Below are positions 32,031-55,995 of a DNA stretch of 64,000 bases, in pieces. The DNA is from Macrostomum hystrix (lineage: Eukaryota > Animalia > Platyhelminthes). The notes beneath the pieces are model-generated. The model saw nothing but the letters and a program-made list of their open reading frames with translations. It was not told where the DNA came from and searched no databases. Location of the stretch: contig CATNEN010000001.1 of assembly GCA_950097015.1 (NCBI GenBank), positions 22,568,001-22,632,000 on the forward strand. Direction: 5' to 3'. Both the position numbers and the translations under genes were made by a program. How positions within the stretch are numbered: the stretch's first letter is position 1; every line of letters starts with the position of its first letter.

Positions 32031-32129
32031 ACCCTAATTCCCCCCTGCCTCATCTATCCTATGTCTAATCCCTGCCCTTTCTCAGATTCCTACATTTAAT
32101 ACAGCCGTCGTCTTTTAGGTTCTGTAAGT

Positions 32130-33286
32130 TGTGATATTTTGACTTAGGTCTCTCTTTACGTTGAGATTCCTAAATGAGGTCGGGTGTCCTACTCTTTGTG
32201 AGAGATTCTCTTTTCGCAACTCGAAAATAACGAAGACAAGACGATTCAAATTCCAAGCTAAACAGCTGATATTTAAGTGTTAATTAGTAAATAAGAGAAA
32301 GCTATGATCACTGATCAATTCCCCTGGCAGCGCTCTTTTCGTCCCCTGCCAGGTACTGTACTTAATTCAATCCAATTCACAATTCGCACTAACAAAATCT
32401 CGATAACCGCAACACAAAACACGAACTCTACTCGATAATACGACACGATAAACAACACAAATAAATCCTAGACAAACAGATAGTCCCTATAACAAACAAG
32501 ACAAATAACGCGAAACCTAACCAAAATCCCTAACATAAAACCGAGGCGACCAGCAAGCACTTCTGCACTATGGCACAACGATAGTTCTATCGTGCCACAC
32601 CTAATGTCTGTTCGACGGCGTCCCACCGATGATTGTCGGCGATATGGAGAGTGCTTCCGTGCTTGCCAATCCCTATCTAACACTCCGTCAGCAGTTGGCC
32701 AGACGTACCGAGCTCAGCGCAAGCTACTTACTGACGTGGGGTTGAGTGTGGGGGTTTTCTTTGACTAACTAGTTGGACCGGTTTACCTGTCCCGGTATCT
32801 ATTTACTAGGATGCGTAACACGAATGAGAACAATATCAAGATCAAGAGCAAGAGCAAGGTCAAACGCGAGACCAGAATCACATGAGAACAATATTTCAGC
32901 GCAATAGTCAGTTTTATAGTCAAGCGCCCGCCCCAGCCCTCATCAAAGCCTGGGTGCCGGCCGCGCCGCTTGTTCTTCTGCCAGGTCGACCCTGCCGGTT
33001 AACGAACCGGCTGCTGATTGGCCCGGCTCGGGGTGTCGCACTTAAGTCGGTTCACTTCAATCGGCTAGCCGTCCTCCCATTGGTTGGGCCCACCAGACCA
33101 GGGCTAGTCTGATGCCTTGGCTGTAGAGCAGGGGTGACCGGCCGGTCGCGTGTTAGGCCTGGCTGGGGTGCGCATGTACAAACAACTAACCTATCAGATA
33201 CATTAAAATAATTCATAATATTGACGTGCGCGAATAAGTTACTACAAGTAGAAATATACGCATTATAAAAACATGCCGACACTACA
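32130..33286 (-). repeat. 3' LTR
   Basis: TG...CA ends; matches 40368-41524 at a constant offset of 8238. Confidence 0.96.
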
Positions 33287-33298
33287 CTCCCCCCTCCT
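33287..33298 (-). promoter_or_regulatory. Polypurine tract AGGAGGGGGGAG
   Basis: Directly abuts the 3' LTR; a second copy lies at ~33417-33440. Confidence 0.9.
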
Positions 33299-33918
33299 AA
33301 AAGAAGTGGAGTGCGAACAAAACAGAAAATAAGGGACACAAGACTCGATGCCAAAATAAAACTGGAAACCGAGATTTAAACAGAAAACGAAAATTTTCAA
33401 CTCCTCTGGGGGACACCTCCTCCCCCCCTCCTAAAAGAATAGGAGCTGGTTTAACGCGAAAAAGAAAATTTTACGCTATCTATAATCGTATTAAAGAAAC
33501 AATACAGAAAGCAAAGGTTGTCCAAAGCACAATGTTTTGACTAACGCTTGTATTCCTTCGTCGCCGAAAAGGTACAATTTCAAAAAAATTTAGATTAATA
33601 ATAACAGAACTAAAGCATATTAAGGTTTGCTTAAAGAATTCCATTAGATTTAAATTCAAAATACAAAATTCTGCAACTTGTCATCAAAATTTTACGATTA
33701 ACTACAAAAGGAACAATAGAATGATCAGTTTAACAGCAAATTTAACAATTCGACTTCAAAATTCAACACTTGATTACAAAATTTCAATCAATATTCATGC
33801 CTTTTTCAGCGCAAATTTTCTGACATTATAATTTAATTTGCAAGAAATATACTACTCTTAAAAGTATATCACACACTTCCGCAAGGAAGATCTGTACGAT
33901 TCACGGACTCAACAATTT

Positions 33919-36900
33919 TCACAAATCCAATCTACTGGGCGGTCGGATACACGCTCTGTTTCTCAATCTCGGAGCCCAACGCTCCTGAACTGGTAATTCC
34001 TCTCTTTGTCCTCGGGGCCGGCGTCCTCGGCCTTCTCGGTTCACTACGGCTGGCGGCACTGCGCCACCGCGCGCCGTTGGCACAACTAGCGTGGCTCGCG
34101 GAATCTCTGTCCGCACTGGAATTACTGGCACCCTTGGCACTGACGGCATTGCCTGCCTGTTCGGCACCGGTATCTGTGACGGTGCTTGCCGTGGCGCTAC
34201 TTGGTGTGGTGGCCAATCGATTTCAATATCCGGGTATTCTTCCTCCGGTTCCACCTCTGGCGCTCCGGCGCCGACTATCCCACGCCATGCGCATAATTTT
34301 TCTTCCGACAGATAACACGGTTTGACGCGATCTACACTGACTATTTCGTGGATCCGATCTGGCTGTTCAATGCCATGAAACTTGGGTCCGGGTTCGATTC
34401 TTAAACACTTGCCACTACCGGTGACCTCAAGTACGCGGTATGGTCCGACCCACTTCCGGTTCGTATTAAACTGTTTGTGGCCATTCGAAAGCCAAACTAA
34501 ATCATTCGGTTTATAAAAATTTTGAAATACTTTTGCGTCGTAGTTGGTTTTCATTCGAGTTATTGCTACTGATTGTCGTTGCCTAGCAACGCGAAAGGTC
34601 TCCATGCACTTCCGGTACAATTCATGCACGTGCCGATCCGCAGTTTTTTGTTCTGGCGGAGGCAAACCGATTTCTGCGTCTACTGGCAGTCTCATCTTTC
34701 TGGCAAATAGCATTTCAAATGGACTGAACTTGTTCGACTCGTTAATCGCACTGCGCTGTACCATCACGACGTGGGGCAAGACTTCATCCCACGCGAGGTC
34801 TAGTTCGTCACGCGCTAGCTTAATTCCATCCTTCACAACTCTGACCATTCGCTCACACTTCCCATTCGCTTGTGGGTGGTAACTAGTAGTGTGGCGCAAA
34901 TCAATACGGAAATTCTCCGTTAAGCTCTTCACGATATCTGCGGTGAAAGAAGCTCCTCTATCAGAAATGAATGCTTCCGGTGCGCCATATCGGCAAATCC
35001 ACTCCGTGTACAGAGTCCATGCGGTGCTCTCTGCTGTACAATCGCGGAGGGCCTTCACCTCCATCCATCCGGTGAAATGATCGACCATCAGCAGCAGGTA
35101 TTTATTCCCTCGCTGCGTTGTGTCAAAGGGTCCTGCGTAGTCTATGTGGACCTTCTCGCCCATGTAGCTACTAAGCTCGGGCTCCAATGGCGCTCTCAAA
35201 TTCGGGCCGTATTTCTTTCTAGTCTGACATTCCGGACAAGTCTTAATATAGCGTTCTAAATTCGCAGAATAATTTGGCCACCAGAACCGTTGTCTAATCA
35301 GGTCTCTGGTCTTGGAGATTCCTCCGTGGGCCATCTGATTATGATACCGCTCGAACAATTGCTTTTCGAGTTGCTCACTTTCTGGCAGCACGATCTGCTT
35401 AAATTCGCGGCCTTCATGATCTCTATAACATCTGTAGATAATGTTCGAGTCTACAGTCAACTTGTCATAATCACTGTACAAGGACTTATAACTCCGATGC
35501 ATTCCGATCCATTCGATCTTTGGCGGGCACTGCTCTCGCGCTAACAGGCGGGTTTTCAGTTTCAGCAACTCAGGCTGGCCGTCCTGAAGTTCGACCACAC
35601 CTGCCGGAGAACTTATGTCTATGGCCCCGCAATCTATTCCGTCCGGTTTTCTAGCTGTATTGCACGTGGGGCACTCCTCGTGGTACTTTTTCGGGGGTCC
35701 GTCACGTGATGGTCGGCGGCTTAACGCATCTGCATTGCCATGACTCAGACCTTGACGATATTCTATGGTAAAATCGTACTCTTCCATTCGGCTTATCACT
35801 TCGAACTGATCGAACTGTTCGAGGATCATGTTCCATCTTCCCAACATGCCCTTCGCACCGTGGCACTTCCTCAGCCACTGCAGTGCCGCGTGATCTGTTC
35901 TGATCTTAAAATGGCGACCAATCAGATACGGGCGATAGTGCTCGAGAAAATAAATTAGGGCGTACATCTCCTTCATCGTAGTGCAGTAATTCAACTGGTG
36001 CTGATTTAACGGGTGGGACGCATAAGCGATCACCTTCTCTTCCCCGTCCTGCTCTTGCAACAAATTCCCTCCGATCGCGCTGTCGCTGGCGTCTACATCC
36101 AGGACAAAGGGTCCAGCTTCCTTATCGAATCTGGGATAGCTGAGGACAGGCGCGTGGGTCAATTTTTCTTTCAGCAGTTCGAAGGCTTTCTGGCACTCCT
36201 CATTCCAATGATATTTAACATCCTTTCGAGTCAGATTATTCAGCGGTTCGCTGATTCGGGCAAAGTCTTTAATAAATCGGCGATAGTAGCCTGCTAATCC
36301 TAGGAATCCTCTAAGCTCAGAGATGTTCTCTGGCCTAGGCCATCGTTGTACTTTCTCAATCTTGTCTTTACTGGTGTACACACCATGCTGACACACAGTA
36401 TGACCGAGGAATTCAACCTCCTTCCGAAAGAGAAAAGTCTTTTCGGGCTTAATTTTCATTCCTGCTTCCTCTAATCTGGCAAAAATAAGATCTAAATTTC
36501 TCAGCATCTCTTCGAAATTCTTGCCCGTGCAAATGACATCATCTAAATACAACAGGGCGAACTTGTAAGCGTAATCTCCTAAGATTCGCTGCATGATCCT
36601 TTGGAAACAGGCTGGACCGTTGGTTACTCCAAACGGCAGCACCTTCCACTGGAATAATCCATCGTGGGTTCGAAACGCCAATTTCTCTCTGTCACTCTCG
36701 CGCACTTTGACAGACCAGTAAGCTCCTACCATGTCAAGTGTGCTAAAGTACTGGTTGCCGGCGAGGGACTCTAATGATTCTTGAATTAATGGCAATGGGA
36801 AACTGTCCTTCTTAGTCTTGTTATTCAACTGTCTAAAATCACAGCAAAAGCGAAATTCACCGTTCTTCTTCCGAGCGAGGACTATAGGACAACTCCACTC

Positions 36901-38790
36901 GGACTCTGATGGTTCTACAAGATCGTGATCTAGTAATTGGCGGACATGTTCGCTGACAAACTCACGCTGCTCAGGGCTCTGCTTTCGCAGTGGAATTCGA
37001 ACTGGAATCTCGTCGGTCGTCTCAATCTTAAATTCGCCGACGCGGGTCTTTCCAATGTCCCACTGATTCTGCGAAATCATACCTTGATACCTGTGTAGCA
37101 ACTCAATTACTTTCAGTTGCTGATTTGCTGTCAGATCAGTCTCATCCAGTCTAAATTGATCCCTTATCTTAGTTGCTTCGCTCAGCGTGGGGATCCTCTT
37201 CTGATCTTGCCGCTGCTCGGCTGGCTCAGCTTTATCTACAAGAAAAATCTCTAACTCTTCGTTCGCTGGCTCATACTCAGCAATAACCTCATTCTCATGA
37301 ATGGTCTTCTCATGCTCGGTTGGGTTCATGACCCTAACAAAGGTTTCGCCGAATTCATCTAGCGACGTTAGTCCCTTTGCAACTAGAATCGACTGATCCT
37401 CATCCTGACCGCTTTTCCTGGTAACAAAACCGTACTCAGCTGCATCAGGGGTCTCCCTACATTTGACTTTAATAAATTTCTCACTCAGTGCCGGAATCTT
37501 TGCCATGCTGGTTACTTGCAGTAGCACGCAACGTGCACTTTCATCTGCAGTGGTTAGTCTAATCCGAATGTTATTAAATTCTAGCGTCTTCTCAGCTATA
37601 TCGAGCTTAATTCGGTGACGGGTCAACAAATCGAGACCAATAATCGAAGTGGTTAGCAGGTCTTCTGCGACAAAGAACGGGTGGATCACCTCGCTCTGTC
37701 CGATTCTAACTCTTAAGGACACCTGGCCCAACAGTCTGGTAGACTGGCTGTTGGCCGATTTCATGTTAATAGCGCACGGTTTTAATGCGGCTTTACAGGA
37801 GAAGAGCCGGTCAAATAGACTCTTGTCAATCACGCAGTGCGACGCTCCCGTATCAATCAAAATTTCTTCACTAACGCCGTTCAACTGACTGTGCAGAAAT
37901 AAACCTGAGTTTATGGCCTGATTGGAAATAATCGGTTGGACAAATCCGGCTGCCTGCTTTTTTGCAAGCTTCTCTCCGGCTGCGGCTTCAACCTGCACGG
38001 AGTTTTCGAGCCTATTCATTTCCTTTCTAAATTCTCTTATTTCTTTCTTCAGTTCCTCAACTTCCTTAGACTTCAGCCTCTCCTCTGGCTTCCTCACAGT
38101 CTGTTGCTGTGGAGCTCTACTAGTTACAGGCTCTCGCTGCTTTGCAGCTGCTTTTGCAGTCTTCACAGGTGCTTTCATTTGCACTTCTTGGCGCAATTGC
38201 CGAATCTCTTCTCGCAGCTCTGACAGTTCATTTGCTGCCGCTGCATCTACGGACTTTCGCTGCTCAGTCTCACTGACTCTTAATTCAATGCCGTTTAATT
38301 TTCGGCGGTTGGCGTCAAAGGCCTGGCTCTGAGCTCTGCGCTCTGCCTTCTCTGTTTCGATTCCTGCGCAATCGGCGCAACTACAATAGGATTCTACTGA
38401 CTCCGATATTGAATTAATAGACTGTTCGCTGTGTCCGCAGCATTCTACCTCTAAGGCGCGCTGCTTGTTACTATGAGTAGTATCACTAGCCCTAATAAAA
38501 GAAAAACTAGCTCGCTTCCTCAAATACAATAATAAATCGTAATTAGTTACTCCGCACGTGTCCCGCAAATGAAAGAAAATCTCCTTGCCTCTCCTATCTC
38601 TGAGGAATCCGTAGCCTCTGTTATAATTGTACCACACTAATTTTCCGAACTCTACGTTATTAAGCTTAATCTGCCGTGCGTCATTAATCACATCTCTCTG
38701 CTCAACCGGCCTTCGGTTATTGCCGGGGGTAAATAAATTTAGTGGCGGGGAACGGTCAACCCCCCTCTGCTGCCGTTCCGCTTGCAGTTT
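33919..38790 (-). CDS. pol: Pol polyprotein expressed by -1 frameshift: cold-shock-like domain, coiled coils, aspartic protease, RT, RNase H, integrase
   Basis: ILIDTGAS protease; LPFGVTNGPACFQR and LYLDD RT; VLDVDASD...TDHAAL RNase H; HNQMAH...CPEC and HIDY...SDRG...NGKCE integrase; GPY module. The frame is open back to the slippery site. Confidence 0.96.
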   Translation of the reverse strand, partial: KLQAERQQRGVDRSPPLNLFTPGNNRRPVEQRDVINDARQIKLNNVEFGKLVWYNYNRGYGFLRDRRGKEIFFHLRDTCGVTNYDLLLYLRKRASFSFIRASDTTHSNKQRALEVECCGHSEQSINSISESVESYCSCADCAGIETEKAERRAQSQAFDANRRKLNGIELRVSETEQRKSVDAAAANELSELREEIRQLRQEVQMKAPVKTAKAAAKQREPVTSRAPQQQTVRKPEERLKSKEVEELKKEIREFRKEMNRLENSVQVEAAAGEKLAKKQAAGFVQPIISNQAINSGLFLHSQLNGVSEEILIDTGASHCVIDKSLFDRLFSCKAALKPCAINMKSANSQSTRLLGQVSLRVRIGQSEVIHPFFVAEDLLTTSIIGLDLLTRHRIKLDIAEKTLEFNNIRIRLTTADESARCVLLQVTSMAKIPALSEKFIKVKCRETPDAAEYGFVTRKSGQDEDQSILVAKGLTSLDEFGETFVRVMNPTEHEKTIHENEVIAEYEPANEELEIFLVDKAEPAEQRQDQKRIPTLSEATKIRDQFRLDETDLTANQQLKVIELLHRYQGMISQNQWDIGKTRVGEFKIETTDEIPVRIPLRKQSPEQREFVSEHVRQLLDHDLVEPSESEWSCPIVLARKKNGEFRFCCDFRQLNNKTKKDSFPLPLIQESLESLAGNQYFSTLDMVGAYWSVKVRESDREKLAFRTHDGLFQWKVLPFGVTNGPACFQRIMQRILGDYAYKFALLYLDDVICTGKNFEEMLRNLDLIFARLEEAGMKIKPEKTFLFRKEVEFLGHTVCQHGVYTSKDKIEKVQRWPRPENISELRGFLGLAGYYRRFIKDFARISEPLNNLTRKDVKYHWNEECQKAFELLKEKLTHAPVLSYPRFDKEAGPFVLDVDASDSAIGGNLLQEQDGEEKVIAYASHPLNQHQLNYCTTMKEMYALIYFLEHYRPYLIGRHFKIRTDHAALQWLRKCHGAKGMLGRWNMILEQFDQFEVISRMEEYDFTIEYRQGLSHGNADALSRRPSRDGPPKKYHEECPTCNTARKPDGIDCGAIDISSPAGVVELQDGQPELLKLKTRLLAREQCPPKIEWIGMHRSYKSLYSDYDKLTVDSNIIYRCYRDHEGREFKQIVLPESEQLEKQLFERYHNQMAHGGISKTRDLIRQRFWWPNYSANLERYIKTCPECQTRKKYGPNLRAPLEPELSSYMGEKVHIDYAGPFDTTQRGNKYLLLMVDHFTGWMEVKALRDCTAESTAWTLYTEWICRYGAPEAFISDRGASFTADIVKSLTENFRIDLRHTTSYHPQANGKCERMVRVVKDGIKLARDELDLAWDEVLPHVVMVQRSAINESNKFSPFEMLFARKMRLPVDAEIGLPPPEQKTADRHVHELYRKCMETFRVARQRQSVAITRMKTNYDAKVFQNFYKPNDLVWLSNGHKQFNTNRKWVGPYRVLEVTGSGKCLRIEPGPKFHGIEQPDRIHEIVSVDRVKPCYLSEEKLCAWRGIVGAGAPEVEPEEEYPDIEIDWPPHQVAPRQAPSQIPVPNRQAMPSVPRVPVIPVRTEIPRATLVVPTARGGAVPPAVVNREGRGRRPRGQREELPVQERWAPRLRNRACIRPPSRLDL

Positions 38791-38793
38791 AAA
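38725..38793 (-). promoter_or_regulatory. -1 programmed ribosomal frameshift signal (T TTA AAC + stem/pseudoknot)
   Basis: Heptamer at 38793-38787 is in the correct gag phase (CCT TTA AAC), and the -1 frame runs into pol. Downstream GGAACGG/CCGTTCC stem; loop GGGGGT is complementary to downstream ACCCCC. Confidence 0.85.
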
Positions 38794-40043
38794 GGCTGTA
38801 GTCTCTGGGGACAGTCTCGCGCTACATGACCTGGTTGGTCGCAGATGTAACAGGTTCTGGGTCGTGCAGTAGGCGCATTCGCTCCCGCAGGATTGAAACG
38901 GTCATTGGCTGGTTGGCCTCGCCAACCTGACTGCCTTTCGACACCAGTCTGCTGTCTAGTGGGATTAAACTGCCTAGGTGGAAACATTCTGTTGTAACTG
39001 CTCATCTGCGGATTAAAATACGGTTGTGGCTGCGTCTGAGCCGGCGGTCTCATTGGCCGCTGAGTCTGCATCGATGCGAATTGCGGTCGCTGTTCCTGCC
39101 GGTAAAAGTACGGCGAACTCTCAGTGCGAAATTGCGGTGGTGGATAATAATTCGGTTCCTCTATCTGCTCAAACTGCGAGCTCTGCCTAGCGGCTTTGCC
39201 ACGGAACTGTGCCTGCTTGACGGGTTCAACCTGGGAAACCAAAGTCTCAGGCGGTTCCGCTTTTCTTCTACCCTTAGCCCCTTGGCTTGCCAGCTCATCG
39301 AGGATCTCCTCGTTCTTGGCTGCTGCGAGCAAATCCATGGCGGTATAAGCGTCGCCTCTGGACCGTCTGATAGAAATGACAGCCCGCCTAATTTTGTAAT
39401 TCAAAATTCCGGCTTCAAATCGCTCAGAAATTCTTTCTCTGGCCTGATTTTCAAGGCCTGCCTTCCGAACTAATTCAACAAGAGCGTCATAAAAGTGCTC
39501 AATGCTCTCGCCTTCCTGTTGTTTCCGGTTCATCAACTGAATTTTTGCTTCTTCCTGCTGGGCAACTGGCCTGAATTTCTGCTGCAAACTCTCAACTAAT
39601 CGTGGGTAAGCGAGGTTCGGGTCAAGGCCTAGATTAATATAAATCTTGTAAGCTTCTTCATCCAGCAAAGACAATAATTGGCAGGCTCTGGCATCAGCCT
39701 CAATGGCGTTACCTTGGCAATAGTTAGTAAAAATCTTTAGAAAAACTTCAAAGTCTCCTCCGACAGCATAAGGCTTGGGTTTCGCTACTGAATTATTATT
39801 CCTATAAATAAGTCTAGGGGCAGCTCTCAAATTCTGGATCTGATTCTGCAGATCGGTAATTAAAGCTCTTAGTTGGTTATTGTCAGCTGCTAAGTTCTCT
39901 ACTACTGCGGCTTGAGCATTGACCTGTGGGTCGGCTAAGTTTTGACCTTGGTCTGGCCCGAGAGCAGGGCCTTCATTCTGTTCATTGGCTACGGCCGCAG
40001 GGTCTGGGCCAGCACCTCTAATTTCAACTCCTACACCCGCCAT
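38739..40043 (-). CDS. gag: Gag with C-terminal CCHC zinc knuckle
   Basis: ATG at 40043; capsid-like RKQQEGESIEHFYDAL; CYICDQPGHVARDC. Confidence 0.93.
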   Translation of the reverse strand: MAGVGVEIRGAGPDPAAVANEQNEGPALGPDQGQNLADPQVNAQAAVVENLAADNNQLRALITDLQNQIQNLRAAPRLIYRNNNSVAKPKPYAVGGDFEVFLKIFTNYCQGNAIEADARACQLLSLLDEEAYKIYINLGLDPNLAYPRLVESLQQKFRPVAQQEEAKIQLMNRKQQEGESIEHFYDALVELVRKAGLENQARERISERFEAGILNYKIRRAVISIRRSRGDAYTAMDLLAAAKNEEILDELASQGAKGRRKAEPPETLVSQVEPVKQAQFRGKAARQSSQFEQIEEPNYYPPPQFRTESSPYFYRQEQRPQFASMQTQRPMRPPAQTQPQPYFNPQMSSYNRMFPPRQFNPTRQQTGVERQSGWRGQPANDRFNPAGANAPTARPRTCYICDQPGHVARDCPQRLQPLNCKRNGSRGGLTVPRH

Positions 40044-40349
40044 GTACAATTTTTATGAGTCACTGATAAGAAAGTCTGCGCGGGCGCTTATCTATAATAA
40101 AATCTAACTAACCGAGGCAATAAAATTTCAATCGACCAATTGTACTAACACTGACCTTTTAAGTTTGTAGCAAAAATAATAATAAGGTGGAATCTTTAAT
40201 TAGATTGCAGAATAACTATATCAATATAAATACCGTGGAGGTATGTACTTCTCCAGGCTATCTCTACAGCAGAACTCTTAAACTTTCTTCTTAACAGGAA
40301 TTCTCCTTTCTCTCAATAGAAATCAATCCTCCTTCAATAGAAATCTCTC

Positions 40350-40365
40350 CTCCCTAGAGGCTCCA
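40350..40365 (-). promoter_or_regulatory. Primer-binding site TGGAGCCTCTAGGGAG
   Basis: Lies 2 nt inside the 5' LTR and starts TGG (complement of tRNA CCA); tRNA identity not determined. Confidence 0.8.
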
Positions 40366-40367
40366 AA

Positions 40368-41524
40368 TGTGATATTTTGACTTAGGTCTCTCTTTACGTT
40401 GAGATTCCTAAATGAGGTCGGGTGTCCTACTCTTTGTGAGAGATTCTCTTTTCGCAACTCGAAAATAACGAAGACAAGACGATTCAAATTCCAAGCTAAA
40501 CAGCTGATATTTAAGTGTTAATTAGTAAATAAGAGAAAGCTATGATCACTGATCAATTCCCCTGGCAGCGCTCTTTTCGTCCCCTGCCAGGTACTGTACT
40601 TAATTCAATCCAATTCACAATTCGCACTAACAAAATCTCGATAACCGCAACACAAAACACGAACTCTACTCGATAATACGACACGATAAACAACACAAAT
40701 AAATCCTAGACAAACAGATAGTCCCTATAACAAACAAGACAAATAACGCGAAACCTAACCAAAATCCCTAACATAAAACCGAGGCGACCAGCAAGCACTT
40801 CTGCACTATGGCACAACGATAGTTCTATCGTGCCACACCTAATGTCTGTTCGACGGCGTCCCACCGATGATTGTCGGCGATATGGAGAGTGCTTCCGTGC
40901 TTGCCAATCCCTATCTAACACTCCGTCAGCAGTTGGCCAGACGTACCGAGCTCAGCGCAAGCTACTTACTGACGTGGGGTTGAGTGTGGGGGTTTTCTTT
41001 GACTAACTAGTTGGACCGGTTTACCTGTCCCGGTATCTATTTACTAGGATGCGTAACACGAATGAGAACAATATCAAGATCAAGAGCAAGAGCAAGGTCA
41101 AACGCGAGACCAGAATCACATGAGAACAATATTTCAGCGCAATAGTCAGTTTTATAGTCAAGCGCCCGCCCCAGCCCTCATCAAAGCCTGGGTGCCGGCC
41201 GCGCCGCTTGTTCTTCTGCCAGGTCGACCCTGCCGGTTAACGAACCGGCTGCTGATTGGCCCGGCTCGGGGTGTCGCACTTAAGTCGGTTCACTTCAATC
41301 GGCTAGCCGTCCTCCCATTGGTTGGGCCCACCAGACCAGGGCTAGTCTGATGCCTTGGCTGTAGAGCAGGGGTGACCGGCCGGTCGCGTGTTAGGCCTGG
41401 CTGGGGTGCGCATGTACAAACAACTAACCTATCAGATACATTAAAATAATTCATAATATTGACGTGCGCGAATAAGTTACTACAAGTAGAAATATACGCA
41501 TTATAAAAACATGCCGACACTACA
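40368..41524 (-). repeat. 5' LTR
   Basis: Matches 32130-33286 by inspection. Confidence 0.96.
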
Positions 41525-41599
41525 AAGTGGCCCACTGGCTCATTGCCGACCCCTAGCTGCTAAATACCAGACCAAATAACTCAAGTATACACTGGGGTC

Positions 41600-47010: not shown

Positions 47011-47471
47011 ACCTCTTCAAACCTAAGCTCTAACGCCTACACAGTCAGTTCTGCCGGATGGCCAGCAGGACTGGCCATAGACTATTTTTGCTCGCTTCTT
47101 TACTCTCTTAACCTCCGGTAAACAAAAATAAGCCCAGACCTTCCCTATTTTCAGTCTCTTTTTCTCTCCAAAAAATGGCTTTAGCCCCCAGACGCTCTTT
47201 AAGAGTTGCGGCCTTAGAAGCCAGACGCGCTCTAGGCTTGCACAGTGATTCAGAAAGCAGCTCAGACGGCGAAACGGAATCTGACAATTCTGAATTTGAA
47301 GAAGGAACTGGAGATGAAGGAATGGACGAAACACAGCAGACTCCACAGAGATTCAAGAATGCCATAAAATGTAGAGGAACTCGCCAACAAACATCACAAT
47401 CGCGATCCAAACGCGCAATGCAAAAGGCCTATTTTGACCACCTGAGCTGTTGCGTCGGCTGCTCAAACTAG
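47008..47471 (+). mobile_element. Possible piggyBac-like 5' end with acidic N-terminal ORF fragment
   Basis: TTAA|CCTCTT start and an ORF containing SDSESSSDGETESDNSEFEE; no catalytic region or second terminus found. Confidence 0.3.
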
Positions 47472-49039
47472 AAATCGATGTCACAATTAGCGACTATAAA
47501 GGCGCGGGTGAGGTTCATCGAGTCGGCAGCGCCGTCGGGCTTGCATCCTGCTTGAGGCCGGTGCCGACGTCCAGCTGAAAGACAGGAGAGGGAAACCAGT
47601 CGCTGCAGACGGTGGGGTGTGGGGCAAACATGGATGAATGAATAGAATGGATTGCTATTCTGGCTCTGGCTATTTTCGTTTTTGACTCTTTTGCATCCGG
47701 TTCCCCCCCGTGCCTTTTCATTGGTTGATGATTGCCATAGACAATTTTCGGCCTTCGCCCCTTTCTTTCGATGCACAAGCGCAAAGAACTGAGAATGTCG
47801 GTTACTTGCAGAGTGAAAGATCTGGTGAAAGATCAGAGAGACTTAGAGAGGAAACCGCTCGTGTCTGGGTGAGGTTCTACCAAAAGGCTATATAAATAAA
47901 TAAATGAATAATAAAGTGAATAATTGACTAAATAATCCCATACAATAAAAAGTGTTGGCAGAGTTGCTTTTTACTTACTGATTGTAACTGATATTTTAAA
48001 CTCGATATTTTCAATAATATATAAAATATGAAATATATTTAGAATGAATTCGTAGTCCATTGTTTTTTTATCGTAAACCGGATATAATTAATTTCTATCC
48101 TTCAAAACCATAAAATTTTTGTAGTAAAAAATTCGCAGTATAAAACACATTTATTTCTACTTTAAGTAAACATAAACGTATGAACGTCGAGGAAGTAGGA
48201 TGAAACAAATATTTTTTCTCCACCAATAGAAATCGTCATTGCTACGATAGCTAAATATCGATCGAACATTTTTTGCTCGACCTTCTATTAAACGATTTAT
48301 TCGTTCCGTGTCATTCGTTCTAGAGCCGCTAGAGCCGCTACAACGAATTATCAAGGTAATCTGGTTTGTAAAACCTCATTTATATTATCCCTTTTGTGGA
48401 ACTGTTTTGGTAAGTATATTGTTTGAGTGCTGCTTTACACAACACTTTTAGCCTCCATCGGTGCTTCGGGCTCCGATGGGAATAGGCCCCCCTACCATGT
48501 GGCCAATTTTTTCTTCACAGTTGTACCAAAATGGAAACTATAGTTTAGGCACTAGTGTGTCACTATGCCCAAATCCGGCACTAAAATAGTAACAGCTACA
48601 TTAGATAGTGCAAAAGTTGGCATCTGTAGACCTTGATGAATTAATAAAAACAAAACATGAATGTACTATTTGTTTTGACAAAAAGTGTTCAATACTTTTG
48701 CAGCATCTAATGTTATACTTATTACACTTTGATGTTATAACTTATAACAATAACAAAAAATAACATTGTCTAATCTATCAAAAATTTATATGGCGAAAAT
48801 ATTCTCTATTGATGGAAAGTTATAAGGACATCTAGGATTCTAGGGGCTATTAAAGCTAATGTTTTAAATTTATTGCTAAGTAGTGAAATACAAACTCTAA
48901 ATTAGTTCTATGAAATATTGGTTACAATTTAATACTGTTACAGGTGTAATTAAATGCTGATTAGAATCCCACTGGTGCCTCCAAAGTTGTACTTGTACTA
49001 GGGATATATTATTAATAACTGAAGAACAATGGTGCCAAT

Positions 49040-49190
49040 TTTTTTACTGATGTGGTTCCAATTTTTAGTGTAGATGAGTTTCGCAACCGATTTCGACTTC
49101 CGTGTGGATCTTTTGAATTCCTGCTCAGGGAGTTGTATATGCATGGCCAATTTGTGGTTCAGCAGCACACAACAGAAATATCAAGTAGGT
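49040..49190 (+). pseudogene. PIF/Harbinger transposase N-terminal fragment (mirror copy ~59897-60047)
   Basis: FFTDVVPIFSVDEFRNRFRLPCGSFEFLLREL matches the F-x3-FR-x5-F-x2-L pattern of Harbinger transposases. Confidence 0.5.
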
Positions 49191-50094
49191 CTACATTTAT
49201 TTCTCTTTTTTAATTCTATTATGAGTGTGAAACCATGAGTTAGACAGTTTATTTTGTGGGTCTGAAGCAGAATTAGGTTGGCCCCTGATGGCCTAAGGCT
49301 TGTCTTTGCTTTATTAGAGTAAGTAATATTGACCTAGACTAGGCCTAGACTTAGTGGTTAGTACTATAACTAGCTTGGTGGATTACTCATTCAAATCTCT
49401 GCGAACATCGCGAAGGAACCGGCACCCAACAAGGAGGCGGACTCCTCGCGCCGTCCGATAAACCCGGAAGCTGAACCTCTCACAGTCATCCGGAAACTCC
49501 GACGACTGCTGGGGGGCCCGTTGCGGGAGGCGCCAGCCAAACCACAAAGCCAAAGCGCACTTACGCTGCTATGGCAAAGAGCCAGCCGGCCTTGGTTATC
49601 CGAGGCTAGGAGACGCCCCTCTCAACAGCGCAACTCGACCAGATCTGACGCAGATTGGACTCCCATCTGGTCAAACTGGCACTGAGCGGCACTGTGCTGC
49701 ACGTCCTGAAGACCGACATCCAGGACCAAGCCCTCATTGTCCAGCCTGCCAACAACTAGTCCGGACAGCAACTCCTCGAGATGCTGAAATCCTTCGACTG
49801 GGGCACGGAAATGGGCAACCTGTTTATCTACAGGGAGGACGAGCGCCCCCAGACACACCGTCATTGTGTTTGGATCCGAGCTCGCAGTGCTATCACCAAC
49901 GCCGGAGAACTGCGCCGCCTGCTGTTGGCAATCCACCCGGATCTGCCAGCAAACGGTGTCGTGGTTCATGAAACCATCACCAGACCTGGTGGAGACTCCA
50001 GTCTCCGTCCAGTCTAGGAGAGACAAACAAGAGCTTGTTGGCCATGTTTAGAGAAGAAGCTGAGTGAGAGGCCCAGCAGTGTCCCCTCAGCCAG

Positions 50095-50205
50095 TGGGCA
50101 GTCGGCAGTGGAGGGCAGTGGAGGGCAGCCGGCAGTGGAGGGCAGTCGGCAGTGGAGGGCAGGGAGGGCAGTCGGCAGTGGAGGGCAGTGGAAGGCAGTC
50201 GGCAA
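50095..50205 (+). repeat. GGCAGTGGAG / GGCAGTC minisatellite (mirror 58882-58992)
   Basis: Tandem 10- and 17-bp units. Confidence 0.85.
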
Positions 50206-50222
50206 GTCAAGGCGATGTGGAA

Positions 50223-52026
50223 ATGGAGACAGAAGTAGATTTTAGTAGGGTAGAATTCGATGAATTTGAGCAGGAAAGTCGAAGCGATGACGACACGGAC
50301 AGCGAAAATGATGAAGACAATCGGCCATTGGAGGTAGAGCTACAGGCACTCCTTGTTTTGTTCTTTTCAACATATAACATTTCCCGTGACGCCATGGCTT
50401 TCCTATTATCGGGTTTACGCGATATTGGTTTGCCTGTCACAAAATCGTACAAAACGTTTGAACGCCTCGTCAGAGAAGACTGTCCTACTGGTGACTTGGT
50501 GGCCATGGGAGACGGGCACTTTCGTTATATTTCTATTCTGGAGAATCTGCAGAAACTACTTTCCGCGAATTTGTTGACACTGAGACCAGAAAATTTGCTG
50601 CATGAAAGTCAAACAAAGTGTTACAAATTCGACGCAATTCTAAACAGTGACGGACTTCCTCTCTATCGATCCAGTACGATTAGTCTATGGCCAATCCTAA
50701 TGAAAATTAAATCCGCATTCGCTAAGCCTTTTCCAGTGGCTGTTTGGGCCGGCACTGGAAAGCCACCAGTACAGGAGTACCTGCAACAGTTTTGCCAAGA
50801 GGCAAAAAACTTTCTGTCTGGTCCAGTCAAAATCAGTGAGAAAATCAGAATCATGTTCTCCACTATTTATTTTGTCTTCGACACCCCTGCCCGCAGTTTT
50901 TTAATGTGCACTCTGGGTCACACAAGCTACTTAGGATGCAGTTACTGTCGAGATGTGGGCTTGCGTGCTGAAGGCAGTGTCATTTTCCGTAACTGCTGGC
51001 CAGAATAGATGTGGGGAAGCGTACCGATCCCTAGTAGAGAACAACCAGAAAAAAGACGCCACAGGAGCGGTCATCAAGTCACCACTGTTGGACCTGCCCA
51101 ACATTGACTTCGTCAACTGTTTTCCTCTGGATTTTTAACATGCCGTTTGTCTGGGAGCAGTGAGGAAGTTAATGCACTTTTATTTTGGAGGAGGCTGCCG
51201 CTTTAGTCGCAGGAATGTGAAGTCCTTGTCGGACATCATTGCCGGTATTGCCAGCTGGACTCCGTCTAATTTCCAGAGAAGACCTCGCCGCATAGATAAG
51301 TGTCTTAACCATTTTAAGGCGACAGAGTTCAAACAAATTATTCTTTACCTGGGACCAATAATTTTTAAGGGATATGTTAAGGAACAGTTTTACAAAAATT
51401 TTCTTCTACTGCACTTCGCCGTATACTGCTATTCCACGGAAAGGTATGCTAATCTATGGGATTCAGCGAAAAGCTGCATCGAGGTATTTGTCGAACAGAT
51501 GTCAAAGTTATTTAGCCAAAAATCAATTAGCTACAATATTCATGCACTTCTTCACCTCGACCAGTTTGTTAGAAGGCTAGGTAACTTAAAAAATTTTAGT
51601 ACATTTCCATTCGAAAGCTATCTGGGAGCAATCAAGAGAAGGGTCAAAGTGACCAGGCATGTCGCCGCTCATTCAGTTTGTCAAGTACTAAAAGTACGAA
51701 ATATGTACCTCAGCCAGCCAGCAGAAACAACTATAGAATTCAGCACGAAGAAGGGTGACAATTGCTGCTTCGTTGGGACGACATGCATTCATATTGATGA
51801 AGTTAAACCGGACGGCATAAGTGGCAGAGTGCTCCAGGAATTCGACAATGTCTACAACTATCCTTTCGACTCCCTGGCACTTGGGATTGGAGTTTACCGC
51901 CTAACATCCGAAATCGCAACTGGCCGCCCAGGGCAAAAATGTTGGCTGCTTCCGAAAGCTCTTAATAGACCGGCCCAAAATGACGACTTTTTTTACGTCA
52001 TTCCGCTAACGGGACAGGAAAGTTAG
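50223..52026 (+). pseudogene. CACTA/EnSpm (CMC superfamily) transposase, disrupted
   Basis: DGLPLYRSSTISLWPI, FDTPARSF, GHTSYLGCSYC, PLDF*HAVCLG, FKATEF, YNIHALLHL and FSTFPFESYLG motifs. Frameshift near 50990-51010 and in-frame TAA at 51136-38. Confidence 0.85.
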
Positions 52027-52467
52027 CCTTGTTTATCCCCTTCTACGAGTGCAACATGTTCATAAATTTTTTATCTACTCTACACAACTCTATACTTGGA
52101 TTTGGGTTTAGCAAACAGGAAACTTTGCAAATAGTTCAGGACAGGTTTGCGCCCTTATCTACGTGAGGAGAGATAAGGAGCAAATAGTGTGGGAACTTGA
52201 GCCCTAGGCTGAATCCACCCACCTATGTTGACAAAACGGCCGCCGATTTTTTGCTTCCCAAATTCGCTTGCAACTCAGACGAGCGGACCAGGGACCACAA
52301 CAGACGGAGATAAGCTGAAGGGCGTTTGGTCTGGCGTGCAATAAGAAATAGGTTACTTTGTTTACCCTTAACTTTGACTTGACTAGCCTCTGGGGTGGGG
52401 CAAGGTAGCAACTTAAAACCCTAAAACACTATTCTATGGAAATTCGAAGCAGATAAGACAAGTGTCC

Positions 52468-52538
52468 CCTGACTAGCTGAGTTGGCAAATAACAGTTACA
52501 TGGCCTGTAACTGTTATTTGCCAACTCAGCTAGTCAGG
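52468..52538. repeat. Perfect hairpin: 33-bp arms, 5-nt loop (mirror 56549-56619)
   Basis: CCTGACTAGCTGAGTTGGCAAATAACAGTTACA-TGGCC-reverse complement. Confidence 0.95.
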
Positions 52539-53041
52539 ATCTTTGCTATTTGTTACAGACATATCCCGTTTGTAAAAAATTATCCCGTTCACAGAATTGG
52601 GTGTATGTATACTCCATTTCTTTTGGCATCATCGCATCTTCAAATTGTACAAAAAGCACAAAAAAATTACAAATCGTTTGTCTTGGCTAAGCTGTATATA
52701 TGAGACATACAATTTATCCTGTTCATACAATTGTGTTATGATAAACTCCCGCATCATTACATCTGAAAAATAGACAGAAAAAACAATAAATTACTTTCCA
52801 CATGCCCGCACACCTAGCACCTAGCACCGTAGCAAGTACCTGCACTGTTCTTTTCGACATTCTTTTTAAACCAATATTTTACATGCGATAGTGGCTTCGA
52901 CTTGGTTCTTCAGCAGCAAGCATAATTAAATAAACAAGTGATATCACTTGGCCATAATAAGCAAAGGAAATTATAAAAAACTAGTCTCGGGTAATCAACA
53001 CCACTTCATAATTCCGAAATGTTCTCAAGAGCATAGGCTAT

Positions 53042-53560
53042 ATGCTTGCTGCTGCGGCAACTGCGTACGAAGATAAACCCTCACTCCACCTGCAGAGAGT
53101 GGCTAGATTGTCTAGCTATGGTAGATGGTGTCTAGATTTATTATTCACGGGAGACAATGTAGGCTCCTGGAGATCTGGTGATAGAGATAGAGATAATCGC
53201 AAACCCATTTCTTCTTACCAGCCCGTCGATGACCTGAGCGTTTTAGACGCCTTGGACTTCACCGTGATGCGCCGTGAATTCGTTGACCTCCAATCTTACG
53301 ACAGCGCTGCCCTCTTCGATCTCTATAAGCCGGTTGCCGACGAAGATGCCACGGTGGCCATGAGCGCATCGTAGTGCTTCGCAGGCAAAAATGAGCAGCA
53401 GAAGCAGGGAAGTCGGTCCTCTGGCGATACCATCAGGTCCATCGGACAGCAACAGCATCAGCAGCAGCTGCCTCTGATTGATAGCTTCCTTTGCTTGGTT
53501 CCTTCGCATCTCCCAACGCATGTGCAGCCGCCGGCGCCAGGCGTCAGAAAAAAGAATAAG
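53042..53560 (+). pseudogene. Upstream exon of ETS copy B; its start is supplied by the inverted-repeat arm, with a premature TAG at 53372-74
   Basis: Homology to 45021-45446 begins at about 53092, where the arm ends. TAG occurs where copy A has GAG. Confidence 0.55.
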
Positions 53561-54867: not shown

Positions 54868-55995
54868 ACTCAGAATTACAGTACAATGACACATGAAACA
54901 TGACATGACATGACATGAAATGACATGAAACATGACACATGACTCAGTTGTCATGTCATAAATCGGATTGTCCGATTCTCAGTTGCGTTACGTCACTCAC
55001 GAAAAGTTGCGTAAACTATTTTTTCTTACGGATATGTTTTGTTCTGTTTCCTCGTGTTTTCTCATATTGCCCATGTATGACTTATCATCTGTAATTAAAC
55101 CTTGATTTTGAAGACATGTAATTAAGACAGACTGTTTCCTATGAAAGTATGAGATAACTACAAGTACTTATAAATGCTATATAAATGCTACTTATAAATA
55201 CTATAAATAAACTAATTGTTGCTGCACATTATTTCATAAACTAAAACAAACAAAACAAAAAGATTATTCAACCTTGTTGCGAGCGCAGTCGTGGAACTCC
55301 ATTGACATGACATGAGTCCGTGAAGGTCGCTGATCGTTATCTAACCTGCTAAACTCGTCCAGATACAGCTCGCCGGGATGCTGCGCCAACTGCTACTCGA
55401 CGCTGACTAGCTGATTGAATTAGAATAGACACTAATATCAATGTCATCCGCAGCTTCCGTTTCTTGACACGCCTGACCGTGTACCAGGCGTCAAGTGTTC
55501 ATGGAGAGCGTCTGGAAAAAATATGGAATGTTTCAGACCCAATTTACATATTTATCTTTGTCTATAACGATTGACTGTAATCAGATGGGAAGCATGCGAA
55601 TCTTTTAAGTGAGCTAGCTTAAGGGTCGGAGTGTTAATGTTAGTAGCAGCTTAGTATAAATGTTAGTAGAAATGAAAAAATGTACTTTTGCTACGAATTG
55701 TAGCAAAGCTGGCAAGCAAAGCAAGTGAGCAAGTGCAGGAACACGAAGCAAGGAGTGCTCGATAAATATGTTGGTTTTCATGCTAAGCTAAAGCTAAGAA
55801 GCTAAACATTTAGGCTGTGCATCAAGCTAATAAATAAATATGAGTGAAATAAAGGAAGACAACATGCAAAGATGTATTCCAAAATCTTCAAATTCAAATT
55901 CGGGATTCGCGAAGCAACAAAATCAAATGCGCGATCTGAAATGACGAAGTGGGAGATTTCGAGCTGTGTTAGCAGCTCGTTATTGGACAGCATGA

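What the first reader, a model, noticed from the sequence alone, without database searches (positions are those of the whole stretch)
38440..38655. Intact Gypsy retrotransposon whose Pol begins with a cold-shock (CSD/OB-fold) RNA-binding domain
Seen: before the protease, Pol reads FGKLVWYNYNRGYGFLRDRRGKEIFFHLRD...SFSFIR...KQRALEV. Known: this matches the cold-shock domain pattern G.VKWFN..KG(F/Y)GFI...DVF(V/F)H....A.NV (RNP1/RNP2), and CSDs are not part of canonical Ty3/Gypsy Pol. Inference: in the Gag-Pol frameshift product the CCHC knuckle sits ~55 aa from the CSD, giving a Lin28/plant-CSP-like knuckle+CSD pairing made only at Pol stoichiometry. It could act as a captured RNA chaperone for genome packaging or tRNA annealing, a frameshift/translation regulator, or a counter to host small-RNA silencing. 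The element looks recently inserted, so the domain is probably maintained by selection. I do not know of a described lineage like this, but cannot search.
Basis: partly seen in the sequence, partly recalled or inferred. Interest (0 to 1): 0.9.

Follow-up and report, generated by a model that had tools for sequence, protein, structure and literature searches.

The report
Flatworm Gypsy retrotransposon carrying cold-shock domain
A young, intact Ty3/Gypsy retrotransposon of a Macrostomum-like flatworm encodes a real cold-shock (OB-fold) nucleic-acid-binding domain between its zinc knuckle and its protease, a layout shared by a small clade of elements in this genome and in M. lignano and not found described in the searchable literature.

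Summary
Window 38440-38655 (minus strand) encodes a 72-residue cold-shock domain (CSD) at the start of Pol of an intact Ty3/Gypsy element (32130-41524; identical 1157-bp LTRs; AAGT target duplication). Pfam alone is sub-threshold for this copy (21.7 bits against a cut-off of 27). Other evidence supports it:
- A profile of the element CSDs hits only CSD chains in the PDB.
- AlphaFold gives a five-stranded barrel at pLDDT 92.
- Foldseek returns only cold-shock proteins (TM 0.7-0.86).

The RNP1/RNP2 aromatic residues are kept. The domain is not a one-off. About 33 copies from at least six families in this 220-Mb genome carry it, always in the order zinc knuckle, CSD, protease. So do Macrostomum lignano polyproteins. 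In an RT tree these families form one clade (96/91 support) with two deep branches: a two-ORF type with -1 frameshift (this window) and a single-ORF type. Five other Gypsy families here and the 118 hits listed outside Macrostomum lack it. Non-synonymous divergence in the CSD resembles that of the protease, while synonymous sites are saturated.

Its function as a second nucleic-acid chaperone beside the nucleocapsid is inferred, not shown. Whether it was captured once or twice is unresolved. First-stage readers also flagged a sibling copy and another CSD-bearing element in this genome.

The parts
32130..41524 (-). Whole LTR retrotransposon (9395 bp), flanked by the 4-bp target duplication AAGT at 32126-32129 and 41525-41528
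   Evidence: Offset comparison and boundary reading
40368..41524 (-). 5' LTR (in element sense), 1157 bp, starts TG and ends CA
   Evidence: 100% identical to 32130-33286
32130..33286 (-). 3' LTR, 1157 bp
40348..40365 (-). Primer-binding site, two bases after the 5' LTR. It is complementary to CCA plus the last 15 nt of a tRNA-Thr(AGT) gene of this genome, with the discriminator base skipped.
38739..40049 (-). gag ORF (436 aa, stop codon included)
   Evidence: weak Retrotrans_gag/PNMA hits
38805..38858 (-). CCHC zinc knuckle of the nucleocapsid (gag residues 398-415)
   Evidence: PF00098, 32.1 bits
38787..38793 (-). Slippery heptamer T TTA AAC in the gag reading frame; predicted site of the -1 frameshift
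   Evidence: Read. The same heptamer stands in the same frame in the divergent family L010.
38749..38779 (-). Predicted 11-bp hairpin, 7 nt after the heptamer (frameshift stimulator)
   Evidence: The same hairpin is at the same distance in L010, with an AA:UU to GG:CC compensatory change.
33919..38901 (-). pol open frame (1660 codons open, -1 relative to gag, overlapping gag by 162 nt)
38440..38655 (-). Cold-shock domain (five-stranded OB barrel with a helix between b3 and b4)
37948..38376 (-). Charged linker between CSD and protease, predicted as two long helices at low confidence. Present only in this lineage (A).
   Evidence: AF2 secondary structure, pLDDT 50-75 at best; weak coiled-coil-type Pfam hits
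37618..37887 (-). Aspartic protease
   Evidence: PF13975/PF13650
36394..36873 (-). Reverse transcriptase
   Evidence: PF00078, 119 bits
35812..36207 (-). RNase H
   Evidence: PF17919/PF17917
34873..35376 (-). Integrase (H2C2 zinc domain and catalytic core)
   Evidence: PF17921, PF00665
33287..33298 (-). Polypurine tract (AGGAGGGGGGAG in element sense) abutting the 3' LTR
   Evidence: Sequence read

Best explanation
Shown. This is a recently inserted, structurally intact Ty3/Gypsy LTR retrotransposon of a Macrostomum-like flatworm. Its Gag-Pol polyprotein carries a genuine cold-shock domain (CSD, OB fold) between the nucleocapsid zinc knuckle and the protease. The domain is an inherited, selected part of a small clade of elements in at least two Macrostomum genomes. 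In this family it is translated only after a -1 ribosomal frameshift at T TTA AAC plus a hairpin. In the sister lineage it is part of a single Gag-Pol ORF.

Inferred. The CSD keeps the aromatic RNP1/RNP2 surface with which cold-shock proteins bind and melt single-stranded RNA and DNA, and it sits next to the nucleocapsid. It most likely acts inside the particle as a second nucleic-acid chaperone or tether. It would help hold the genomic RNA, help anneal the tRNA primer, or help the strand transfers of reverse transcription. It could do so as part of the uncleaved Gag-Pol or as a product released by the protease.
For: Fold and family:
- Profile against the PDB hits cold-shock proteins almost exclusively.
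- AF2 model has pLDDT 91.9.
- The top Foldseek hits are all cold-shock proteins, TM up to 0.86.
- The sibling family L010 passes Pfam's cut-off over positions 3-64 of 66, and lineage B copies score 28-33 bits over the full length.
- The binding residues W, Y-G-F and F-F-H align with the host's Y-box CSDs.

Inherited part of the element:
- The order knuckle, CSD, protease, RT, RNase H, integrase is the same in four further families and in M. lignano proteins P0006 and P0020.
- The genome holds 35 hits to the element-CSD profile, most of them in open frames of 1900-2066 aa.
- The CSD bearers form one clade in the RT tree, support 96/91.

Selection:
- Between families pN in the CSD is 0.21-0.40, against 0.22-0.34 in the protease and 0.38-0.45 in gag.
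- pS is at least 0.77, so synonymous sites are saturated.

Youth:
- The LTRs are identical.
- Five copies are 99.67-99.82% alike over 3.3 kb.

Frameshift signal: the heptamer and hairpin are conserved, with a compensatory change in the stem.

The chaperone role follows from established knowledge of CspA/CspB, YB-1 and Lin28 CSDs and of retroviral nucleocapsid proteins.
Against: - No experiment or expression data bear on the domain. The only RNA evidence is two 151-nt contigs of a sediment metatranscriptome, on gag and the leader but not on the CSD, and DNA carry-over is not excluded.
- The window's own CSD is below Pfam's cut-off, and only its N-terminal half aligns.
- The CSD evolves much faster than RT: 57% against 92% identity to L010. 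The constraint is therefore moderate.
- Protease cleavage sites are unknown, so the mature form is unknown.
- The two lineages' CSDs recognise each other weakly: 6-16 bits by HMM, hhalign score 27.
- The RT clade joins two long branches (0.78 and 1.35), so attraction between them is possible.
- Distribution outside Macrostomum was probed only through the top 150 of 1152 HMMER hits.
Confidence: 0.55

Rival explanations
1. The CSD is a sequence-specific regulator rather than a general chaperone. Like UNR, YB-1 or Lin28, it would bind a motif in the element's own mRNA. It could thereby select that RNA for packaging in cis, or tune translation or frameshifting.
For: The nearest cellular CSDs by profile are UNR/CSDE1-like for lineage B and Y-box-like for lineage A. 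Both kinds are translational regulators. In this family the domain is made only after the frameshift, next to the signal.
Against: In lineage B there is no frameshift to regulate and the domain is made in every polyprotein. No conserved candidate target motif was looked for or found. A single CSD binds short, degenerate motifs (established knowledge).
Confidence: 0.2
2. The CSD is a counter-defence or host-interaction module. It could shield the RNA or cDNA from host nucleases or small-RNA pathways, or recruit a host partner such as PABP, as UNR does.
For: Rapid evolution relative to RT fits a conflict interface. The lineage is restricted to one host genus as far as could be seen.
Against: pN is not above that of gag or protease, so there is no sign of positive selection. 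The conserved residues are the nucleic-acid-binding ones. No partner is known.
Confidence: 0.1
3. The region serves mainly as a structural spacer or regulator of protease activation, like the retroviral transframe/p6* region or the Ty3 junction domain. In that case the OB fold is used for protein contacts, not for nucleic acid.
For: It occupies exactly the nucleocapsid-protease junction. In lineage A it is followed by about 140 residues of predicted long helices just before the protease.
Against: The RNP1/RNP2 aromatic residues, which matter for nucleic-acid stacking and not for the fold alone, are invariant or nearly so in all families. Lineage B lacks the helices.
Confidence: 0.1
4. The two lineages took up their CSDs independently at the same junction: lineage A from a Y-box-type gene and lineage B from a UNR-type gene. 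This is a rival about origin and is compatible with any of the functions above.
For: Lineage-specific HMMs rank cellular CSDs above the other lineage's CSD. hhalign scores are A vs host Y-box 44, B vs host 40 and A vs B 27. The b1-b2 hairpin of A has the Y-box length and that of B the UNR length.
Against: The RT tree makes the two lineages sisters at 96/91, and the insertion point is the same. The C-terminal half (F-x-R-x-x-D ... A-x-V) aligns only between A and B, not with the host. With the CSD evolving about three times faster than RT, identity near 20% is what is expected at 44% RT identity.
Confidence: 0.35
5. The similarity is chance, or the domain is a dead passenger fragment of a host gene carried by one copy.
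For: The Pfam score of this copy is below the cut-off.
Against: Structure prediction and fold search. About 33 copies in at least six families and a second species. Purifying selection. All five sibling copies keep it, with 0-2 substitutions.
Confidence: 0.02

Closest known systems
Metazoan Ty3/Gypsy (Metaviridae) LTR retrotransposons, such as the Mag-type families reported for Macrostomum lignano (PMC12801592)
   Same: LTRs with TG..CA ends, 4-bp target duplication, tRNA primer site, polypurine tract, gag with one CCHC knuckle, pol order protease-RT-RNase H-integrase, and -1 frameshift or single ORF. RT is 47-51% identical to mollusc, spider and trematode elements.
   Different: A CSD between nucleocapsid and protease, and in lineage A a further helical linker of about 140 aa. 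None of the 118 hits listed outside Macrostomum and none of five other Gypsy families of this genome has it. The named clade (Mag, Osvaldo and so on) was not determined.
Lin28 and plant cold-shock proteins (AtCSP/GRP2): CSD plus CCHC knuckles
   Same: A CSD and a retroviral-type CCHC knuckle on one chain, both binding single-stranded RNA. The plant proteins are RNA chaperones.
   Different: The order is reversed (knuckle first), there is one knuckle instead of two or more, and the linker is 28-56 residues. It is part of a polyprotein that a protease cuts, not a free-standing cellular protein. No specific sequence relationship was found.
UNR/CSDE1 and Y-box proteins (cellular CSDs)
   Same: They are the nearest sequences. 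UNR CSD1 (1wfq) scores E 4e-7 to the element profile. The host's Y-box CSD matches lineage A's N-terminal half at hhalign 95% probability.
   Different: There is one domain rather than five to nine. No cellular CSD scores above 38 bits against 120-147 bits within the element lineage, so no recent donor can be named.
LINE-1 ORF1p and RRM-type ORF1 proteins of non-LTR retrotransposons
   Same: A retrotransposon-encoded general RNA-binding fold with chaperone activity. In L1 it is combined with a coiled coil, as the CSD plus long helices may be in lineage A.
   Different: Different fold (RRM, not OB), a different class of element, and a separate ORF. The likeness is functional analogy only.
Other accessory domains captured by LTR retroelements (integrase chromodomain of chromoviruses, dUTPase, second RNase H of Tat elements, env genes)
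   Same: A lineage-defining extra domain taken from the host and kept by selection.
   Different: Different domain, different position and different presumed step of the life cycle.

Membership tests
Ty3/Gypsy LTR retrotransposon | Two LTRs with TG..CA ends and a short target-site duplication | tested here: met
   LTR pair 1157/1157 identical, AAGT on both sides
Ty3/Gypsy LTR retrotransposon | pol domain order protease, RT, RNase H, integrase (integrase last) | tested here: met
   Pfam positions 269-358, 607-766, 829-960 and 1106-1273
Ty3/Gypsy LTR retrotransposon | RT groups with Gypsy elements | tested here: met
   Best homologues are Gypsy-type Pol proteins; tree. Placement in a named GyDB clade was not tested.
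Ty3/Gypsy LTR retrotransposon | tRNA primer-binding site after the 5' LTR and polypurine tract before the 3' LTR | tested here: met
   18-nt site matches the tRNA-Thr(AGT) 3' end apart from the discriminator base. The polypurine tract was read.
Cold-shock domain (Pfam PF00313) | Score at or above Pfam's gathering cut-off (27 bits) | tested here: inconclusive
   Window copy 21.7 bits, N-terminal half only. Sibling family L010 27.8 bits over 3-64/66, and lineage B 28.5-33.5 bits in the genome scan. M. lignano P0006 scores 29.2.
Cold-shock domain (Pfam PF00313) | Five-stranded antiparallel beta-barrel (OB fold) | tested here: met
   AF2 pLDDT 91.9 with strands 3-12, 17-22, 27-31, 52-60 and 66-74. 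All the top Foldseek hits are cold-shock proteins.
Cold-shock domain (Pfam PF00313) | RNP1 (G-[FY]-G-F-I) and RNP2 ([VI]-F-[VF]-H) motifs with exposed aromatic residues | tested here: met
   GYGFL and IFFH in the window. G, F, F and H are invariant in all six families.
Cold-shock domain (Pfam PF00313) | Binds single-stranded nucleic acid | not testable with these tools
   Needs a binding assay
Lin28-type protein | N-terminal CSD followed by two CCHC knuckles in a free-standing protein | tested here: not met
   One knuckle, upstream of the CSD, inside a polyprotein
Programmed -1 ribosomal frameshift signal | Heptamer X XXY YYZ in the upstream frame, within the overlap of the two frames | tested here: met
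   T TTA AAC at 38793-38787 in the gag frame; pol frame open from 38901
Programmed -1 ribosomal frameshift signal | Stable structure 5-9 nt downstream, conserved in relatives | tested here: met
   11-bp hairpin after 7 nt in both the window and L010, with a compensatory AA:UU to GG:CC change. The energy z-scores are not significant on their own (-0.5 and -1.3).
Programmed -1 ribosomal frameshift signal | Frameshifting actually occurs | not testable with these tools
   Needs a reporter assay or peptide evidence

The most novel reading that the evidence does not exclude
A flatworm-specific clade of Gypsy elements has added an OB-fold chaperone to the nucleocapsid. This converges on the answer that LINE-1 reached with an RRM, and on the CSD-knuckle pairing of Lin28. 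In the frameshifting lineage, the CSD plus long helices, made only in Gag-Pol, would act as a Gag-Pol-specific tether. It would bring RT and the tRNA-Thr primer onto the genomic RNA. This would be a previously unknown step in the assembly of LTR retroelements.
Probability: 0.3. Interest if true: 0.75.

Novelty: new variant of a known kind. Interest (0 to 1): 0.62.

Why it matters
LTR retroelements and retroviruses are thought to rely on the nucleocapsid zinc knuckles for RNA packaging, primer annealing and strand transfer. A clade that has kept a second, unrelated single-strand-binding fold right beside the knuckle offers a natural test of what limits those steps. It also adds a new entry to the short list of host domains that retroelements have captured.

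The elements are young and numerous, and they live in a laboratory model genus (Macrostomum), so the question can be studied. There is also a practical point for annotation: CSD counts in gene-family surveys of repeat-rich genomes may include transposon-borne copies.

Tried and rejected
- Word-indexed protein searches found nothing, which says nothing either way. One used the window's CSD region and one the knuckle-CSD region of a lineage B polyprotein.
- A metagenome scan with lineage A patterns returned only four ordinary small cold-shock proteins with no RT nearby.
- ESM Atlas gave only nucleocapsid-protease clusters, at scores near 0.8, which is chance level.
- The search for a cellular donor failed. 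The best cellular domains are from scattered protists at 30-38 bits, and the host's own CSDs score 15-23 bits.
- There are no heat-shock elements in the window of the kind reported in M. lignano LTRs.
- AF2 of the first 350 Pol residues was poor (pLDDT 42.5), so only its secondary structure is used, with caution.
- Expression could not be shown. One sediment metatranscriptome holds two short near-identical contigs on gag and the leader only.
- I could not fetch further non-CSD families or the M. lignano contigs of P0158 and P0159. Whether those two truncated protein models have a CSD upstream is therefore unknown.
- Only the best 150 of 1152 HMMER hits were visible, so transposon CSDs scoring under about 61 bits in other phyla cannot be excluded.
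- Chance similarity and a dead passenger fragment were considered and rejected (see rival explanations).
Full report
**1. What is at the coordinates**

It lies in a long open frame (38901 to 33919, 1660 codons). That frame follows a 436-aa gag ORF (40049-38739).

Both ORFs lie between two direct repeats of 1157 bp, 32130-33286 and 40368-41524. The repeats are identical at every base, start TG, end CA, and are flanked on both sides by AAGT.

Pfam finds these domains:
- a CCHC knuckle at the end of gag;
- in pol, in this order: aspartic protease, RT, RNase H, integrase zinc domain and integrase core.

A polypurine tract abuts the 3' LTR. Two bases after the 5' LTR there is an 18-nt stretch complementary to CCA plus the last 15 nt of a tRNA-Thr(AGT) gene of the same genome. 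The discriminator base is skipped. The element is therefore a complete Ty3/Gypsy LTR retrotransposon on the minus strand, 32130-41524.

**2. Is the cold-shock domain real?**

Pfam alone is not enough for this copy. PF00313 matches residues 16-43 only, at 21.7 bits against a cut-off of 27. Four further lines of evidence settle it.
- A profile of six element-borne copies from this genome (alignment A1) hits 50 distinct PDB sequences at E<=1. Apart from a few marginal hits at E>0.05, they are cold-shock proteins. A UNR/CSDE1 domain is best, at 4e-7.
- AlphaFold2 on A1 gives a confident model: mean pLDDT 91.9, strands 3-12, 17-22, 27-31, 52-60 and 66-74, with a helix between the third and fourth strand.
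- Foldseek against the PDB returns cold-shock proteins as all its top hits (CspA, CspB, CspE, YB-1, YBX2, UNR, CRHSP-24). TM-scores are 0.62-0.86 and probability 1.00.
- In an alignment with the host's own Y-box-type CSDs, the residues that stack on bases are kept: the b1 tryptophan, the G-Y-G-F of RNP1 and the F-F-H of RNP2. G, F, F and H are invariant in all element families.

**3. It is a lineage trait, not an accident of one copy**

The genome is 220 Mb in 42 contigs. It holds five near-identical copies of this family's CSD region and a divergent family at 49% identity (L007/L010).

A scan of the genome with PF00313 shows more than 20 further full-length hits over the cut-off, inside open frames of 1900-2066 aa. 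Four of these were examined. They are single-ORF Gypsy polyproteins with the order gag, CCHC knuckle, CSD, protease, RT, RNase H, integrase.

A scan with the element-CSD profile gives 35 hits. An RT query has at least 1068 first-look candidates, so the CSD bearers are a small minority of the Gypsy copies.

Five other Gypsy families of the genome have no CSD in any frame (L030, L037, L041, L045, L046).

An HMMER search of 1.84 billion representative proteins finds two single-domain hits that are retroelement polyproteins among the 150 best. Both are from Macrostomum lignano and have the same architecture. The other top hits are multi-CSD UNR-like proteins.

The nearest RT homologue is an M. lignano protein at 91% identity. 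The host is therefore very probably a Macrostomum species; which one was not determined.

None of the 120 hits listed by the RT homology search carries a CSD, by precomputed Pfam or by my own profile. Of these, 118 come from outside Macrostomum (molluscs, spiders, trematodes, pseudoscorpion, amphibians, plants, environmental contigs). The other two are truncated lineage A protein models (P0158, P0159) that start after the CSD position.

**4. Evolution**

A maximum-likelihood tree of the RT-RNase H region has 37 rows, was built with LG+C20 and is rooted on plant elements. It unites all CSD bearers in one clade with support 96/91. The clade has two deep branches.
- Lineage A has two ORFs. It comprises the window family, L010, M. 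lignano P0158 and a protein labelled as a bacterial MAG.
- Lineage B has one ORF. It comprises L023-L027 and M. lignano P0020.

The two stems are long (0.78 and 1.35), so attraction between long branches cannot be excluded.

The CSD sequences themselves give a mixed signal.
- Lineage-specific HMMs rank cellular CSDs above the other lineage's CSD.
- hhalign scores are 44 for A against the host Y-box, over the N-terminal half only; 40 for B against the host; and 27 for A against B. The A-B alignment does include the C-terminal half, which aligns with nothing else.

I put one capture at about 0.65 and two captures at about 0.35.

Selection is clear. Between families the synonymous sites are saturated (pS 0.77-0.99). 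pN in the CSD is 0.21-0.40, close to the protease (0.22-0.34), below gag (0.38-0.45) and above RT (0.07-0.14).

All lineages are young.
- This copy has identical LTRs.
- The five copies of its family are 99.67-99.82% alike over 3.3 kb. They have 0-2 substitutions in the CSD, and one copy has a 1-nt indel in the gag/pol overlap.
- Lineage B copies have LTR pairs of 99.6-100% identity.
- L010 is an old broken copy. Its pol is split into two frames, and its frame is disturbed between the slip site and the CSD.

**5. How the domain is made**

pol is in the -1 frame and overlaps gag by 162 nt. Within the overlap, in the gag frame, stands the classical slippery heptamer T TTA AAC (38793-38787). It is followed after 7 nt by an 11-bp hairpin (38779-38749).

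The divergent family L010 has the same heptamer, spacer and hairpin, although its synonymous sites are saturated. Two adjacent stem pairs are changed from A:U to G:C. The peptide read in the -1 frame after the heptamer is also conserved between the two families.

The folding energies alone are not significant (z -0.5 and -1.3). The support comes from position and covariation.

With a shift at this site the last cysteine of the knuckle lies 56 residues before the first glycine of the CSD. In this lineage the CSD is therefore made only in Gag-Pol. In lineage B it is made in every polyprotein, 28-40 residues after the knuckle and about 28 residues before the protease.

Lineage A also has about 140 residues of charged sequence between CSD and protease. 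It is predicted at low confidence as two long helices.

**6. Most likely mechanism**

The fold, the conserved binding surface, the position, the inheritance and the selection are shown. The function is inferred.

Cold-shock domains bind and melt single-stranded RNA and DNA through the RNP1/RNP2 aromatic residues. This is established knowledge for CspA/CspB, YB-1 and Lin28. The nucleocapsid knuckle beside this one is the known chaperone of retroelements.

The simplest reading is therefore a second chaperone or tether for the genomic RNA, the tRNA primer or the strand transfers. My confidence in the whole statement, inferred chaperone function included, is about 0.55.

The rivals are:
- a sequence-specific regulator of packaging or translation (0.2);
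- a host-interaction or counter-defence module (0.1);
- a spacer that regulates protease activation (0.1).

Chance, or a dead passenger fragment, is excluded.

**7. What is known**

- Searches of the open literature for cold-shock domains in LTR retrotransposons, retroelements or Macrostomum elements found nothing relevant.
- The survey of M. lignano LTR retrotransposons (PMC12801592) mentions neither the word cold nor CSD. Its supplements are not held.
- A 2026 survey of metazoan Gypsy elements and the GyDB network paper also do not mention it.
- Repbase and GyDB themselves could not be searched.
- The M. lignano proteins are deposited only as 'hypothetical', 'reverse transcriptase' or 'CCHC-type domain-containing'.

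I therefore file this as a new variant of a known kind: a Ty3/Gypsy element with an undescribed accessory domain.

**8. Limits**

- Only the top 150 of 1152 HMMER hits could be seen.
- Expression evidence is minimal.
- First-stage readers of this scan had flagged the same feature in a sibling copy and in another element of this genome. These are notes, not independent evidence.

Noticed in passing
window 38749-38793 (minus strand); L010:5887-5940: Textbook -1 frameshift signal: T TTA AAC, a 7-nt spacer and an 11-bp hairpin. It is conserved in a family whose synonymous sites are saturated, with an AA:UU to GG:CC compensatory change in the stem.
   Followed up: yes
window 40348-40365; L057:1441-1516: The primer-binding site matches CCA plus the last 15 nt of a tRNA-Thr(AGT) gene but skips the discriminator base. 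The primer pairing would therefore carry a one-base bulge, or another isodecoder is used.
   Followed up: partly
window 47354-53094 and 55993-61731: A perfect (100%) inverted repeat with arms of about 5.7 kb around a 2.9-kb spacer. Each arm holds ORFs of 314 and 288 aa without Pfam hits. It may be a real palindromic duplication or an assembly artefact.
   Followed up: no
window 64-2043 (plus strand): A 659-aa ORF with an integrase zinc domain and core, belonging to another retroelement that runs off the window's start.
   Followed up: no
protein P0159: A protein deposited as 'MAG: Kangiellaceae bacterium, reverse transcriptase' is 76% identical to this flatworm Pol and nests inside lineage A. 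The 6.5-kb contig is probably flatworm DNA binned into a bacterial genome.
   Followed up: partly
window 39524-39673 and 40070-40220: Two 151-nt contigs of a sediment metatranscriptome match gag and the leader with 1 and 4 differences. A closely related element, and so probably its host, was present in that sediment sample. Transcription is not proven.
   Followed up: partly
L008 (G000:C14:1336613-1339714): In one copy the similarity to the CSD stops after residue 34. On the other strand, next to it, is a 303-aa ORF made of MGDEA/MGDQA repeats, apparently a tandem array that interrupts the element.
   Followed up: no
L011-L015, L018 (own genome): The host has five intron-less Y-box-type CSD genes that score about 90 bits to Pfam, and at least one UNR-like CSD. 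None is a close relative of the element CSDs.
   Followed up: partly
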